DNA of 64,000 bases, from assembly GCF_963853765.1 (NCBI RefSeq), contig NC_088858.1, forward strand, positions 10,850,001 to 10,914,000, written 5' to 3'. The notes beneath the pieces are model-generated. The model was not told the DNA's origin. It made no database searches and saw nothing but the letters and a program-made list of their open reading frames with translations. Positions within the stretch are counted from its first letter, which is position 1; the number at the start of each line of letters is the position of its first letter. A program made the position numbers and the translations under genes. Shown here one piece after another: positions 51,401-56,740 of this stretch. This DNA is from Magallana gigas (taxonomy: Eukaryota).

Positions 51401-51722
51401 ACAAAATATACCTGTTGTATTTCTGGCCCCTGATTTCCATGGATCAGGTGTAATAACTTTCCCAAGCTTCTTTTGACCTACAAATACATCATACTATCTT
51501 TTCCAAACAAATATTTTACTACAATAATCATTTTATAAACAAAACATACCAAGAACTTTTAATCATTTTTGTTTCGTACAAATAACATAATATCTGTTAT
51601 TCTTTAATTATGTCGATTTCAAAAATATAAGCCAATACTAATTAGTTATTGCTACAAAACGTTTTACCTACATTTTTCACAAACAACTACAAAACGTCTT
51701 ACTTACATTTTTCACAAACCAT
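48450..51722 (-). CDS. CRIPT: Cysteine-rich PDZ-binding protein, 6 exons, 99 aa
   Basis: Exons 51722-51707, 51477-51412, 50033-49979, 49838-49759, 48820-48803, 48514-48450. Translation: MVCEKCQKKLGKVITPDPWKSGARNTTESGGRVVNENKALTSKKNRFTPYQTFTKCRICKSSVHQSGSHYCQGCAYKKGICAMCGKKIIETKNYRQTSV, with the C-terminal QTSV PDZ ligand. Confidence 0.97.
50405..50909. mobile_element. Tc1/mariner (pogo/Tigger-like) MITE
   Basis: TA|CAGTAAAATTCG ... CGAGTTTTACTG|TA, with internal TTCGTTATATCC repeats. Confidence 0.85.
51245..51345 (+). mobile_element. Decayed tRNA-derived SINE head
   Basis: TAGCTTAATTAG A-box and GGTTCGAATTC B-box. Similar to 58242-58331. Confidence 0.5.
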
Positions 51723-51818
51723 TTTCACAACAATAATAAACAGCAGGAAATGTCAAGTAGAAACATAATATAAAAATTGGGAAATGTAAAATGCGATATT
51801 CCGGGAGATAACTACATA
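51723..51818. promoter_or_regulatory. 96-bp bidirectional promoter between CRIPT and the asparaginase gene
   Basis: Divergent ATGs at 51722 and 51819. A TACATTTCCCA (ZNF143/SBS-like) motif lies on the minus strand at 51778-51788, plus an AACTACA and a GGAA core. Confidence 0.7.
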
Positions 51819-54175
51819 ATGTGTGAACCTGAAGCAGTTCTGATTATACAAACAGGAGGTAAAACATTTTAAATCTAATCTGAAATTTTATTTTTTGCTA
51901 GTGCAGCTTAGTCGGTAGATATTAAAGCCAATTTTATTCCGTAATTCATATTAGAGTATTTTAGAATAGGGCACATGTCACGTGCATAGTCATGTGTCTG
52001 AAATGAATGAGGGCGGATAGGTTCTGTCAAATCACTGGAATCGGAATGTGTAATTTTCAGAATTTTTTGAGTGTGCATGGGTACATTATATATTTCTCAA
52101 GTTATTTAACATTATAAAAGTAAATTTCAATACAGTTCCAGCACTTTTTTCTCCTCTCTTCTATAAGCTGTTTTCTATAAAAAAAAAAATATGCATGTCT
52201 TTGACTGACCTACGCTGTACACCGTCTCAGTGCCGACAGAATTTAAATTACTTCATATAAAAAAATCAATCGCGGTTTGTTTTTTTCAAATGACCTGTTT
52301 TACAAAGTTGTATTTTAATTAATAGCCGTGCCTTTAAATTAAGTCAAAATATAAATGTTTAGTTCTTTTTTAAACATAAAAAACACAGTACAATCGAACA
52401 CTCTCTCAGTCGAGAAATCGAGTCCACAAATCAACGAGGCACACACGTATACTACCAAGCACGGTATGACAATATGATTTGTGATATCAGTACAGAAAAA
52501 TACACACAAACAAACATTTTTCCCCATCAGATACGGATTTATCAGACCGATTTATAAAATGAAAAATGTGTTAAAATCGGAAACATTTTTTTTTTAGAAA
52601 GTAAAAAATAATATTTTGTTCAAACGAGTTAGAATATCTCGTTATGTAACTTGCCATAACGAAGAAGATATCTCGTAGGGACGATTTAAAAAAGTGCATG
52701 TATATGTATATAACTATATATTCTCTTTTTTAATAACTTTATCAAAGTGTTAATTTTTCGAATAATTAAATATTATATGGTGATTTTGGCCGTAGTGTGG
52801 TCAAATCTAATAAAGCCCTTCGTAATTAAATTATGTAAAATAAGTAATAAGGAATTATTCTTGAATACAGTATTATGTGATAATTTCGGCCGTAGCATGA
52901 TCAAATCCAATCAAGCCTTTCAGGCTTGATTGGATTTGACCACGCCCCCACCAAAATTATAACCTCATGCAAAGAATGATTCCTTATTCCCTAATCAATC
53001 GTTATATAGAAAGATTTATTCAACGCGTTATATAGCAAGTCAAACACGCATAAGTTAGTCGTTTAACATCTCACAAAATTATTTTATTATCTCATTATAA
53101 TACCGCCTCAAAAATGAATTTATCTTGCTTAACTTTAAGCATATATAGGAAGACCTTTTCTCTTGTTAAACTGTTTTATATATAAATATACAATATTTTC
53201 TAGATCTGCACATGTTCAAATCCTGGTAAAAGAAAGTATTACATGTATCGTTTGAATGATGTATATGCTTACAATTTAAATATTTCCAAGTTAGTATTAC
53301 CATTGCAAGAAATTCAAAAGAAAATCATTTTCATTGCACAACACAAGTATACAATATCTATTTTTTTTTTCAAGGAACAATAGATAAGGACTATCCTAAA
53401 ACCAACCTGGGGTACGCATTTGAGATCGCGCAGCCTGCCGTGCAGCGGATTCTCCCCCGGGCTAGGGTGGGGCCTGACTCTTGTCACGTGATGTCTGTGT
53501 GTCGGAAAGACAGCCAAGACCTAAGGGATCATGACAGGTACACGCCAGTATATGTGAAATATACACGTATTTGGTGAGGATCAAACCTGCATGCAGTGAA
53601 AGTGGGATTTTATTATGGTCATTTAACTTGAAACGTGCGTTATCGATAACACAAGTTTGCAATAACACCAGTTTGCAATTAAAAAAAAAGATGACATATA
53701 TATTTGCATAGTATATTTTTTGTTCCATCTAATACTTGCATATACTTGCATATAATACAAAATAATACAAATACACATGACAGTGTACGTTTAAGTATGT
53801 TCAATCATGTTTTCAAACAAAGTATACGTGAATGCAAATACCGGTATTTCTTTTTTTATCCTCAGAGAGAAGTTAGCGAGCACGTGCATCGATGCTCGTT
53901 CGACGAGAATTCTTATCACCCACGGAACGGATTCTATGATAGAGACAGCAGCCTACCTGTCCAAGAGGGTCACAGACAAAACCATCGTCATCACCGGAGC
54001 CTTCCTCCCCGAAACCTTCAAAGCGACGGACGCCGATTTCAACGTGGGCTTTGCTCTGGGAGTCCTCACTACGCTGTCGGTGACCGGGGTGTTTATTGCG
54101 ATGAATGGACAGGTTTCACTGTGGTCTAAATGTACGCGGAATCCAGACACTGATATGTTTGAGGGAACATTATGA
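51819..54175 (+). CDS. Short-chain (single-domain) bacterial-type L-asparaginase-like protein, 3 exons, 170 aa
   Basis: Exons 51819-51858, 53375-53537, 53866-54175 (513 nt, phases 1 and 2 consistent). Motifs QTGGTIDKDY, CRKDSQD, ILITHGTDSMIETAAYL, KTIVITGA, DADFNVGFA, GVFIAMNG. Confidence 0.93.
52845..52993. repeat. Palindromic MITE-like repeat with a perfect central hairpin
   Basis: 18-bp arms tcaaatccaatcaagcct / aggcttgattggatttga (52901-52939), with aataaggaat..attccttatt ends. Confidence 0.75.
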
Positions 54176-56740
54176 AGATGTTGAACATAATGTATTTTAT
54201 GCAATGGATGAAACAGTAATGAACGATGATATACGATAATTTTAAATTCGAGCGTTAAATTCTACGCAATATGATGCAAGTGCTGGACTTTGTTGATCAT
54301 TTGGTAAAAATCTATTATTCTGTTAAAGAAAAATTCAAGAGGGCTGGGGAATAGGTTCTATTGTTAACTGTGATTCTACTTACCATGTATGGAAAATACA
54401 TTAATAATGTTATATTCTTTAAAGAATTTATTTAAGTACTAGGAAGTTTTTGAGATATGGGGCATGTTTTTCATTATAGCAGCCCTTTCCCCCAAAAATC
54501 CTTTTTTTCTGTCTAATATATCTTGAATACTCTCCAGACCCAAAATCCGTATACTTTCATTCATATGTGATTTACATGCATGTCCTACTGAAATGCATTT
54601 AAAGTGTTACCCCTTTCCATCTTTTTTGTCATAATTAATCATTAAATAATCATAATTTCCCCATAATTAATGCTTCCTTCAGAGGCATTTTCAATTTTTT
54701 TCAGATATGGAGCTCAGTTGTGTATATATCTTTTTACTGATCAGCTAAATCAACCTATCTCAGAAGAATTATATGAACTCTCAGTAGGTGTTATTCCTTT
54801 TAACATTTACCTACGATAAATAACCAAAACGATAAGGCTTTATACACGTGTATGAATAGAATGACTGCATATTAAAATTGTACAAGAATTATAATGAACA
54901 ATTTATAAAATATTCTATTCTGAATTTTGAGGATCCTTTACAGGGTTGTGTTTTATACTCAGGTGACCACTAAGGCCTATTGGCCTCTTGTATACAAAGT
55001 ATAGTACTTGCATAAATGAGAACAGAACTTCGTTTTCAGTATAAATATTTATATAAATTTATATATGTATATAATATAATTTGAAAATAAAATAATTGAT
55101 GTTAGTTGAATAGTGATATACATGACAACACAATAACATATGTAGCAAGTATTGATGTGTGGTTTATGAGGCAGCATTTTGTATTATACACCAATTTAAG
55201 AGTTTTCTAATGAGTCACTCTATAATATTATATTATATAACTTCTACAATCTGTCTGCTATTAACTGATGGATTTTCCATTCTGATTTCGTATAAAAAAA
55301 ACCAATTGTCTACCATCAAACTACAATATAACAAGACCCCATGGTCTCTTCATTTTGGCTTTAACATTCACTATGAAATAATTCTATTTACATGATAGAT
55401 ACTGGCTTTATTGATAAAACCTACTAACAAAACTGTACAAATGTACACATGTATTGCTCTGGACTATCATATTTACAACTTCCTCCACACAGTCAATGCC
55501 GAAACATACGAAGCATAAACAGAGTATTTTTACAAACATTTATCTTAATGGAAGTTCACAGAACAAAATCAGATCTCTAAAAGTTTGCATTGCACACCTT
55601 TTTAACAATTTGTTCTTGAACTGTAACAGACAACACAGTTCTGTTGCATGTTCCCAGAATTCTATTTTTGTGTTCAAATTCAGCAGTTATGTAATTGCAA
55701 TGCAAGCCGGAAGCACTTTGTGGAGACATTCAATGTTTGGATATGCATCAATGAGACGATTAATTCTTGCGACCATTCACGGCAGCCAATATAACTACAA
55801 TGTATTTGTCTAATACATGTATTATAGAAAATTAACATGTAACAGAATGATAATAAAACAAAATCATACTAAATTTTGCATATATATGAATTCTTAACAG
55901 ACAACCTCATCAAAAACAAAGAATTTTTCAAAAAATGGAAGCACTATAATGCTGTATATAATATATTTATATTCAATTTGATTAACATAACAAAACAAAG
56001 ATTTCAGAAAAGAACTGATTCATAAAATAAAGGTATTCTAAGTAAAAATGAAACTATCGATAACTGACAATCTGTTCCAAACACCATGTCATTCATGATG
56101 CAGTACATACATTTTAGTATAGAAATGGACTGAAGTATTTTTGGATATTCATCCTGAATATACATGTACAGTAGTTTCTTGCTTTTGATTTAATGAATAT
56201 ACCAGTAATTACAAGTTACAAAACATGGATGGTACAATAAAATGATATGTATTTAAGAAAGCCAGTATATTTGAATACATGTTGGTTAAGCTTCATGTGT
56301 TCTACCAAAACATCAGTAAAAATCAGAGCATTTGTAAATGGTCCATACCAAAATCACAAGGTAGATCAACCAACCCGAATGTCAATGATCACAGATAGGG
56401 TACATGAGATCTTGGTCAATATAGAGGTGTTGTAAGTACAAATGTAAACATCGGTTACTTTTGTAGAAATGGACATTCGTAAATGAGTCGACTGGTTTGC
56501 CCACTAAGTAATTCACTGTACTAGTGTATAGATTTTGTATAAACGCAATAAGAAGCAAACCGAACATTTTGTGCATGTTTAACTTAGCCTCGTCAATTTT
56601 GCTTTGAATATTTGTGTTTGTCTTTCTGTTTGGTCTGAAACTGCCTTTAGTCATCATATTTCAGGTCAAAGTTTTGAAGATGGACCTGTCACTTGAATCA
56701 ATTGTTTGGTAGCAATTTGGATTCTTTGTCTCTGAGAATA

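What the first reader, a model, noticed from the sequence alone, without database searches (positions are those of the whole stretch)
51819..54175. Intron-containing, bacterial-style short-chain L-asparaginase in an animal genome (HGT candidate)
Seen: a complete 170-aa spliced ORF with class 1 asparaginase motifs (GGT T15, DKDY Y20, KDS 58-60, HGTD T89/D90) that stops without the C-terminal domain. Established: animal ASPG/60-kDa lysophospholipase has both domains plus ankyrins, and ASRGL1/AGA are Ntn hydrolases. The ~170-aa architecture with GGTIDKDY / RKDS / DAxFNxGFA / GVxIAMxG is that of Rhodospirillum rubrum RrA-type short-chain asparaginases, which I recall as mainly bacterial. Inference: an old bacterial acquisition that has been domesticated (two GT-AG introns, one splitting the GG of the catalytic motif), or a patchily retained ancestral gene. 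The flanking animal genes argue against contamination.
Basis: partly seen in the sequence, partly recalled or inferred. Interest (0 to 1): 0.85.

Follow-up and report, generated by a model that had tools for sequence, protein, structure and literature searches.

The report
Ancient animal short-chain asparaginase gene
The oyster gene is real, spliced and transcribed, and encodes a 170-residue asparaginase of the type so far described only in bacteria, but it is an old gene shared by many animal phyla, not a recent bacterial import.

Summary
Three exons (51819-51858, 53375-53537, 53866-54175, + strand) join through two GT-AG introns into a 170-aa ORF. It has only the class 1 asparaginase N-terminal domain (PF00710). 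Its closest solved relative by sequence and fold is RrA of Rhodospirillum rubrum (TM 0.89-0.92). RNA-derived contigs carry both junctions. It lies between CRIPT and a beta-H-spectrin gene, and RefSeq annotates the same model in Crassostrea angulata (169/170 identical).

The lineage-specific HGT reading is not supported. Orthologues occur in at least 11 animal phyla and in a few protists. Both oyster introns sit at the same alignment column and phase in abalone, Lingula, an acorn worm, amphioxus and a tunicate. The gene with its introns therefore predates the protostome-deuterostome split. AU tests do not reject a single animal or eukaryote clade. That clade lies inside the bacterial short-asparaginase radiation, next to CPR, DPANN, Ignavibacteria and Flavobacteriales sequences, so a very old bacterial origin stays possible but unresolved.

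The likely function is a cytosolic homotetrameric L-asparaginase. One caveat: the catalytic Lys (RrA K158) is Arg in nearly all eukaryote copies.

Verdict: new member of a known kind, moderate interest.

The parts
51819..51858 (+). Exon 1 (coding part): ATG, residues 1-13 and the first base of the G14 codon
   Evidence: An X1 RNA-type contig covers 51823-51856 and joins to exon 2.
51859..53374 (+). Intron 1: 1516 nt, GT..AG, phase 1, splits the GG of the TGGT nucleophile motif. Contains a MITE-like hairpin at about 52783-52993.
   Evidence: joint 51856>53373, skips 1516, GT..AG. Same column and phase in 7 bilaterian genes. Hairpin.
53375..53537 (+). Exon 2: residues 14-68 (part), carrying T15, K18, Y20, D59 and S60
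53538..53865 (+). Intron 2: 328 nt, GT..AG, phase 2, inside the R68 codon
   Evidence: joint skipping 328 nt in contigs of X9, X1, X8. Same column and phase in 6 bilaterian genes.
53866..54175 (+). Exon 3 (coding part): residues 68-170 and stop TGA at 54173-54175. Carries T89-D90, K106, DADFN and R159 (the position of RrA Lys158).
54176..54500 (+). 3' UTR, at least this far
   Evidence: The X8 contig runs uninterrupted from exon 3 to beyond 54500, and the X1 contig reaches 54334. The true end was not determined.

Best explanation
This is a vertically inherited, single-copy nuclear gene of a Crassostrea oyster. It encodes a short-chain class 1 ('type s', RrA-like) L-asparaginase. The gene, already carrying both present introns, existed in the common ancestor of protostomes and deuterostomes. 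Related copies in sponges suggest it is as old as animals, and it was later lost from many lineages. The protein has no room for a signal peptide (strand 1 starts at residue 7), so it is probably cytosolic. It most likely assembles as a dimer of tight dimers, as RrA does. In that arrangement the T15/K18/Y20 hairpin of one protomer completes the active site of a protomer of the other dimer. There it would hydrolyse L-asparagine to L-aspartate and ammonia through the T15 nucleophile and the T89-D90 pair. Shown here: gene structure, splicing, family membership by sequence and fold, wide animal distribution and shared introns. Inferred: enzymatic activity, cytosolic location, tetramer and ultimate origin. 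The whole eukaryote clade lies inside the bacterial short-asparaginase radiation. A transfer between bacteria and a very early eukaryote or animal ancestor is therefore plausible, but its direction and date are unresolved.
For: Gene model and splice sites. Both junctions in RNA-type contigs. The RefSeq model in C. angulata is 169/170 identical, and the locus is colinear at 97% with CRIPT, sororin and beta-H-spectrin neighbours. PF00710 only, with no C-terminal domain nearby. Single copy of this type in the genome. Closest solved relative is RrA by sequence (2.3e-15) and by fold (AF2 pLDDT 95.2; Foldseek TM 0.89-0.92, rmsd 1.5-2.0, 36-38% identity). T15, K18, Y20, D59, S60 and T89 are invariant in 26 eukaryote sequences, and D90 is conserved in 25 of 26. 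Homotetramer model: ipSAE 0.91 against a best control of 0.00. That mark was reached by 20 of 30 proteins solved as pairs of one chain and 1 of 23 solved as single chains. The runs agree in at least 89% of contacts and pLDDT is at least 89. One interface is the 123-139 helix and the other is the 15-29 active-site hairpin. Orthologues in at least 11 animal phyla. Identical intron columns and phases in oyster, Haliotis, Lingula, Glandiceps, Branchiostoma and Clavelina, with intron 1 also in Schistosoma. Within the tree, oysters plus scallop group together, as do urchin plus hemichordates plus amphioxus plus crinoid. AU tests: animals as one clade p=0.40; all named eukaryotes as one clade has lnL 1.17 better than the free tree, p=0.51.
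Against: The backbone of the 57-row clade holding the eukaryotes is a polytomy. Animal monophyly is therefore permitted, not demonstrated. Sponge and tardigrade copies are intronless, so they could be separate acquisitions. Plectus groups with Flavobacteriales at 98/96. The catalytic Lys of class 1 asparaginases (RrA Lys158; K158M is inactive, PMC10949315) is Arg159 here and in 24 of 26 eukaryote sequences, so asparaginase activity is not assured. The tetramer model may reflect memory of the solved RrA tetramer. Apparent absence from vertebrates, arthropods and cnidarians rests only on truncated hit lists.
Confidence: 0.75

Rival explanations
1. Ancient horizontal transfer. A bacterium carrying the Arg-type short asparaginase donated the gene to a stem animal or an earlier eukaryote. 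Introns were then gained on the bilaterian stem. This concerns ultimate origin only and is compatible with vertical descent since then.
For: Rooted on long class 1 asparaginases, the eukaryote-containing clade (90/99, stem 0.49) nests among bacterial short asparaginases. The closest prokaryote copies are 48-57% identical to the oyster protein. Sponge copies are intronless. The family was described as patchy and HGT-prone in bacteria (PMC10949315).
Against: Direction cannot be read from an unresolved backbone. The prokaryote members of the clade (CPR, DPANN, Ignavibacteria, Flavobacteriales, an abalone-associated Agaribacterium) are scattered and could be recipients. Non-animal eukaryotes also have it (a diplonemid and MMETSP transcripts), so the gene could be older in eukaryotes.
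Confidence: 0.45
2. Lineage-specific (oyster, bivalve or mollusc) acquisition from bacteria, as the finding's title suggests.
For: Only the bacterial-looking architecture and the bacterial focus of the literature on this family (PMC10949315).
Against: Orthologues in at least 11 phyla. Both introns are shared with deuterostomes and a brachiopod. Non-mollusc animal hits score as well as the best sequences of the prokaryote clade. Animal monophyly is not rejected.
Confidence: 0.02
3. Several independent transfers into different animal lineages. For example, sponges, tardigrade and Plectus may each have acquired the gene separately from the bilaterian intron-bearing gene.
For: Intronless genes in Oscarella, Corticium and Ramazzottius. 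Plectus plus one Logan sequence are sister to Flavobacteriales at 98/96. The backbone is unresolved.
Against: The tree with all named eukaryotes constrained to one clade is slightly better than the free tree. Intron loss is common in tardigrades and compact genomes. The intronless genes lie among eukaryote genes.
Confidence: 0.15
4. The protein is not an L-asparaginase in practice. With Arg in place of the catalytic Lys, the eukaryote-type subfamily may act on another amide substrate, or have very low or regulatory activity.
For: R159 aligns with RrA Lys158 in both HMMER and MAFFT alignments. K158M abolishes RrA activity (PMC10949315). Arg is near-fixed in eukaryotes (24/26), while Lys dominates in the other prokaryote short asparaginases (37 of 54) and is present in both long ones. 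Q61 is typical of eukaryotes, L of prokaryotes.
Against: All other catalytic and substrate-binding residues are strictly conserved across about 600 My of animal evolution. The fold and predicted oligomer match RrA. Arg conserves the positive charge. The RrA paper notes that Lys158 is only moderately conserved in the family.
Confidence: 0.2
5. Bacterial contamination or assembly artefact.
For: None found.
Against: Spliceosomal introns confirmed in RNA contigs. The gene sits in a 564-Mb assembly of 29 contigs between CRIPT and spectrin. The same locus exists in C. angulata. GC content of 33% is typical of the window.
Confidence: 0.005

Closest known systems
RrA, the short-chain L-asparaginase of Rhodospirillum rubrum (PDB 8uoo and mutants; scASNase family, provisionally 'class 1 type s'; PMC10949315, PMC12951835)
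   Same: About 170 residues. N-terminal class 1 domain only. 36-38% identity over the whole chain, TM 0.89-0.92. Equivalents of Thr16, Lys19, Tyr21, Asp57/Ser, Thr87 and Asp88 are present. No signal peptide. The predicted dimer-of-dimers uses the active-site hairpin as an interface.
   Different: Encoded by an intron-bearing animal nuclear gene. Arg159 replaces the catalytic Lys158. Gln61 stands where most bacterial members have Leu. It belongs to a distinct subclade shared with CPR, DPANN and Ignavibacteria sequences, not the RrA-like proteobacterial ones. Activity is untested.
Short asparaginases (about 162 aa) of Saccharibacteria, Peregrinibacteria, Ignavibacteria, Flavobacteriales and DPANN archaea (MAG sequences)
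   Same: Closest non-animal relatives, 48-57% identical. Most share the Arg at the Lys158 position and the QTGGTIDKDYP..GYAFEI N-terminal motif.
   Different: Intronless genes in dense prokaryote gene arrays. None has been characterised.
Animal ASPG / 60-kDa lysophospholipase and typical type I/II class 1 asparaginases (EcAI, EcAII)
   Same: Homologous N-terminal catalytic domain and catalytic Thr/Tyr/Thr-Asp residues.
   Different: Those have the C-terminal domain (plus ankyrin repeats in ASPG). The oyster keeps four such long genes elsewhere, at C6:13.965-14.023 Mb. The short gene has none.

Membership tests
Short-chain class 1 L-asparaginases (scASNase, type s; prototype RrA) | Chain of about 160-180 aa consisting only of the class 1 N-terminal domain, with no C-terminal domain in the gene or nearby | tested here: met
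   170 aa. PF00710 is the only significant domain match. The PF17763 matches in the genome are all about 3.1 Mb away.
Short-chain class 1 L-asparaginases (scASNase, type s; prototype RrA) | Closer in sequence and fold to RrA than to typical class 1 enzymes | tested here: met
   phmmer: RrA 2.3e-15 against the next best 9e-11. Foldseek: the top 25 hits are all RrA chains, TM 0.86-0.92. In the tree it falls inside the short clade, apart from the long outgroup (100/98).
Short-chain class 1 L-asparaginases (scASNase, type s; prototype RrA) | Catalytic Thr16, Tyr21, Thr87 and Asp88, plus the substrate-binding Asp/Ser | tested here: met
   T15, Y20, T89, D90, D59 and S60 are present. All but D90 (25 of 26) are invariant in the 26 eukaryote sequences.
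Short-chain class 1 L-asparaginases (scASNase, type s; prototype RrA) | Lys19, the residue stated to be unique to scASNases and highly conserved in them (PMC10949315) | tested here: met
   K18 is invariant in eukaryotes and present in 51 of 54 prokaryote rows. The long enzymes have Ser.
Short-chain class 1 L-asparaginases (scASNase, type s; prototype RrA) | Catalytic Lys158 of the Thr-Lys-Asp triad. It is essential in RrA but, per the paper, only moderately conserved in the family. | tested here: not met
   Arg159 stands at this column in the oyster and in 24 of 26 eukaryotes. Lys is present in 37 of 54 prokaryote rows and in both long enzymes.
Short-chain class 1 L-asparaginases (scASNase, type s; prototype RrA) | Homotetramer (dimer of tight dimers) with the active site completed across dimers | tested here: met
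   In silico only. The four-copy model scores ipSAE 0.91 against a best control of 0.00. That mark was reached by 20 of 30 homo-pairs and 1 of 23 single chains. Runs agree in at least 89% of contacts, pLDDT at least 89. Interfaces are 121-139/146-151 and 15-29/59-61/115-121. The result may be memory of the RrA structure.
Short-chain class 1 L-asparaginases (scASNase, type s; prototype RrA) | Cytoplasmic, with no signal peptide | tested here: inconclusive
   Only 6 residues precede strand 1, which leaves no room for a signal peptide. No predictor was run.
Short-chain class 1 L-asparaginases (scASNase, type s; prototype RrA) | L-asparagine hydrolysis with little glutaminase activity | not testable with these tools
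   Needs an enzyme assay.
Horizontally acquired bacterial gene in an animal lineage | Absent from related animal lineages, restricted to the recipient clade | tested here: not met
   Present in at least 11 animal phyla.
Horizontally acquired bacterial gene in an animal lineage | Recipient sequences nested with support inside a donor clade | tested here: inconclusive
   The eukaryote-containing clade nests within bacterial short asparaginases (90/99). Inside it, the relations between eukaryotes and prokaryotes form a polytomy. One eukaryote clade is not rejected.
Horizontally acquired bacterial gene in an animal lineage | Integrated in host DNA rather than contamination | tested here: met
   Introns, animal neighbours and a colinear locus in a sister species.
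ASPG / 60-kDa lysophospholipase | N- and C-terminal asparaginase domains plus ankyrin repeats | tested here: not met
   No PF17763 near the gene. The ORF stops at residue 170, and the transcript contig continues into the 3' UTR.

The most novel reading that the evidence does not exclude
Animals (and a few protists), together with CPR, DPANN, Ignavibacteria and Flavobacteriales lineages, share a distinct 'Arg-type' subfamily of short asparaginases. In it the canonical catalytic Lys is replaced by Arg. This subfamily may have a substrate or mechanism different from RrA, and it has moved between eukaryotes and prokaryotes at least once, possibly from eukaryote to prokaryote.
Probability: 0.15. 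Interest if true: 0.6.

Novelty: new member of a known kind. Interest (0 to 1): 0.42.

Why it matters
Short-chain asparaginases were defined in 2024 from a survey of bacterial genomes, and only one protein, RrA, has been studied (PMC10949315, PMC12951835). I found no paper in the held library that describes animal members. Databases label them 'uncharacterized' or misleadingly 'periplasmic'.

Showing that this enzyme type is an old, intron-bearing gene of many marine invertebrate phyla and of parasitic flukes has three consequences. It extends the family to eukaryotes. It gives a natural Lys-to-Arg variant of the class 1 catalytic triad to test. It also removes this gene from the list of candidate recent bacteria-to-mollusc transfers. 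It adds a second, unstudied route of asparagine breakdown in animals that also keep ASPG-like enzymes.

Tried and rejected
- **Microsynteny.** Six-frame pieces of the 6-kb flanks of seven other animal loci were run by tblastn against the window. Only the asparaginase itself matched.
- **Selection from the sister species.** The CDS differs from C. angulata at 1 of 513 sites and the introns at 19 of 1839. This is too little divergence for dN/dS.
- **The search of earlier findings near the place.** Nothing returned.
- **ESM Atlas by features.** It returned only bacterial PF00710 clusters and gave no information on eukaryote range.
- **Metazoan HGT compendium (PMC13342648).** No supplements are held, so I could not see whether this gene is listed.
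- **Preprint on V4R-asparaginase conflict systems in prokaryotes.** It concerns other architectures and is not relevant here.
- **Raw poly-A reads of X19.** Only about 1% of the run was read and none fell on the exons, so nothing can be said about strand or expression level.
- **Exon 2 alone.** It gives no Pfam or NCBIfam hit, being too short. This is not evidence against the model.
- **Contamination and a long isoform with a C-terminal domain.** Both were considered and rejected.
Full report
**1. What is in the sequence**

On the + strand an ATG at 51819 opens a 40-nt coding exon that ends ...ACA GGA G|GTAAAA. After a polypyrimidine tract and CAAG|, a 163-nt exon starts at 53375 and ends ...GAC AG|GTACAC. 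After TCCTCAG|, a 310-nt exon starts at 53866 and runs to TGA at 54173-54175. The three exons sum to 513 nt and give a 170-residue protein. Intron 1 is phase 1 inside the G14 codon. Intron 2 is phase 2 inside R68.

Contigs assembled from RNA-type runs carry exactly these joints. The 328-nt skip is in three runs of three different studies, one of them an RNA-seq library on record. The 1516-nt skip is in a 668-nt contig that spans all three exons. Another contig continues at least 325 nt past the stop codon, so the ORF does not continue into a further coding exon.

**2. Genomic setting**

The window is G000:C6:10850001-10914000 of a 564-Mb, 29-contig assembly. The gene is single copy.

The protein differs at one residue (G168R) from RefSeq LOC128177139 of Crassostrea angulata. 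That locus is colinear with the window at 97% identity over 15 kb. It is annotated with CRIPT head-to-head about 100 bp upstream, a sororin-like gene beyond it, and a 4136-aa beta-H-spectrin downstream on the other strand. An ORF with the spectrin PH domain is present in the window. So the host is a Crassostrea oyster, the context is animal, and the gene model is already in public annotation as an 'uncharacterized protein'.

The genome also has four tandem long asparaginase genes, with N- and C-terminal domains, about 3.1 Mb away. There is no C-terminal-domain match near this gene.

**3. Family**

- Exon 3 alone hits Pfam PF00710 (3.4e-15).
- The best solved relatives by sequence are the RrA entries (2.3e-15, against 9e-11 for the next protein).
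- An AlphaFold2 model built on a 100-sequence alignment has mean pLDDT 95.2. Its 25 best Foldseek matches are all RrA chains (TM 0.86-0.92, rmsd 1.5-2.0 Å, 35-38% identity). Typical class 1 enzymes match only through their N-terminal half.
- RrA is the prototype of the short-chain asparaginases. They were defined from a survey of 1554 bacterial species and found in about 7% of them. They are cytoplasmic and tetrameric, with millimolar affinity for L-Asn and almost no glutaminase activity (PMC10949315). They are now provisionally called class 1 type s (PMC12951835).

**4. Distribution**

Profile and single-sequence searches of the 5.8-billion-protein collection returned named orthologues of 160-200 aa from the following groups:

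- Bivalves: Crassostrea, Saccostrea, Mytilus, Pecten, Mizuhopecten, Argopecten, Ylistrum, Tegillarca.
- Gastropods: Lottia, Haliotis (three species), Aplysia.
- Brachiopod: Lingula.
- Nemertean: Lineus.
- Annelid: Owenia.
- Flukes: Schistosoma, Paragonimus, Fasciolopsis.
- Nematode: Plectus.
- Tardigrade: Ramazzottius.
- Echinoderms: Strongylocentrotus, Lytechinus, Diadema, Acanthaster, Antedon.
- Hemichordates: Glandiceps, Ptychodera.
- Amphioxus: three species.
- Tunicate: Clavelina.
- Homoscleromorph sponges: Oscarella lobularis, O. pearsei, Corticium.
- Protists: a diplonemid and two MMETSP transcripts.

I saw no vertebrate, arthropod or cnidarian. The lists are cut at 120 rows, so that absence is only suggestive.

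**5. Shared introns**

I fetched seven other animal loci and threaded each annotated protein exactly through its DNA, allowing GT/GC..AG jumps. On a common alignment:

- Intron 1 (phase 1, second Gly of TGGT) falls at the same column in oyster, Haliotis, Lingula, Schistosoma, Glandiceps, Branchiostoma and Clavelina.
- Intron 2 (phase 2, the Arg of D-R-E) falls at the same column in all of these except Schistosoma.
- Exon 2 is 160 nt in five of them and 163 nt in the oyster.

Two introns shared in position and phase between lophotrochozoans and three deuterostome phyla put the intron-bearing gene in their common ancestor. Oscarella, Corticium and Ramazzottius have intronless genes, but these lie among eukaryote genes on large scaffolds.

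**6. Tree**

I built an IQ-TREE (LG+C20+F+G4, PMSF) of 89 sequences, rooted on the N-terminal halves of two long asparaginases. It included 31 named prokaryote loci from GTDB genomes.

- It recovers a clade of 57 rows (UFboot 90, SH-aLRT 99, stem 0.49) that nests among other bacterial short asparaginases.
- This clade holds every eukaryote sequence plus three prokaryote sets:
  - a 20-row group of Saccharibacteria, Peregrinibacteria, Paceibacterota, Ignavibacteria, DPANN and other archaea (96/85);
  - three Flavobacteriales sequences joined to Plectus (98/96);
  - Agaribacterium haliotis.
- Its backbone is unresolved.
- Inside it, the resolved groups mostly, though not always, follow taxonomy: oysters with scallop, flukes together, sponges together, urchin with hemichordates, amphioxus and crinoid.
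- AU tests do not reject animals (without Plectus) as one clade (delta lnL 4.0, p=0.40).
- With all 28 named eukaryotes held together, the constrained tree is 1.17 lnL units better than the free one (p=0.51).
- The prokaryote members sit in dense prokaryote gene arrays.

A single old eukaryote lineage is fully compatible with the data. Whether it came from bacteria, or seeded the scattered prokaryote members, cannot be decided here.

**7. Function and mechanism**

Against RrA's critical residues (Thr16, Tyr21, Thr87, Asp88, Lys158, plus the family-specific Lys19; PMC10949315), the oyster protein has T15, Y20, T89, D90 and K18, together with D59 and S60. Across 26 eukaryote sequences these are invariant, apart from D90 (25 of 26).

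The exception is the catalytic lysine. In both the HMMER pairwise alignment and the MAFFT family alignment, RrA Lys158 aligns with Arg159. Arg occupies this column in 24 of 26 eukaryotes and in most of the sister prokaryote group. Lys is present in 37 of 54 prokaryote rows and in both long enzymes. K158M inactivates RrA, and the authors note that this Lys is only moderately conserved in the family.

A four-copy model passes the complex test. ipSAE is 0.91 against a best control of 0.00. That mark was reached by 20 of 30 proteins solved as homo-pairs and 1 of 23 solved as single chains. The runs agree in at least 89% of contacts, and pLDDT is at least 89. The model has two interfaces: the 121-139/146-151 helix face, and the 15-29/59-61/115-121 active-site face. 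This is the RrA arrangement, though the model may be drawing on the solved RrA tetramer.

With only six residues before strand 1, a signal peptide is unlikely.

I therefore read the protein as a cytosolic, homotetrameric L-asparaginase. I put about one chance in five on the Arg variant reflecting a different substrate or much reduced activity.

**8. Verdict**

The gene is a new (eukaryotic, uncharacterised) member of a recently defined enzyme family, with a noteworthy Lys-to-Arg change. Interest is moderate.

Noticed in passing
window 52783-52993 (inside intron 1): MITE-like hairpin: 47-nt arms at 52872-52918 and 52922-52968 (79% complementary), plus outer inverted pairs. RNA reads and short contigs from other copies pile up here, with 'opposite strands' joints and loose ends. 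It therefore looks like a dispersed, transcribed repeat.
   Followed up: partly
G000:C6:13965000-14023000 (outside the window): Tandem array of four long class 1 asparaginase (ASPG-like) genes with both PF00710 and PF17763 matches. Several matches contain stop codons, which may reflect introns or decayed copies.
   Followed up: no
window ~51700-51818, and L014:4196-9904: CRIPT is annotated head-to-head with the asparaginase in C. angulata, about 100 bp apart. A high-depth minus-strand RNA contig ends at window 51705-51747. This suggests a shared bidirectional promoter.
   Followed up: no
L003:12598-12780 and L004:5552-5731: A thioredoxin-domain gene lies next to the short asparaginase in both the acorn worm Glandiceps and the brachiopod Lingula, with a weak 22-aa match (59%, 5e-7). 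This may be a remnant of ancient linkage. It is not present in the oyster window.
   Followed up: partly
P0077 (Plectus sambesii); L016, L021, L030: The Plectus protein and one Logan sequence group with Flavobacteriales at 98/96, not with other animals. This could be contamination of that assembly or a separate transfer.
   Followed up: no
P0126 (Agaribacterium haliotis): A gammaproteobacterium named after abalone carries a eukaryote-type short asparaginase on a long branch inside the eukaryote-containing clade.
   Followed up: no
P0073, P0331, P0086, P0089, P0090, P0136, P0138 (metagenome proteins): Proteins of 276-619 aa contain a short-asparaginase-like domain at 47-56% identity to oyster exon 3. 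These are possible fusions with other domains.
   Followed up: no
L005 (Schistosoma mattheei), L006 (Clavelina): Schistosoma has lost intron 2 and has three lineage-specific introns, two of them only 37-44 nt long, and its annotation ends in a 4-nt terminal exon. Clavelina has one extra phase-0 intron.
   Followed up: partly
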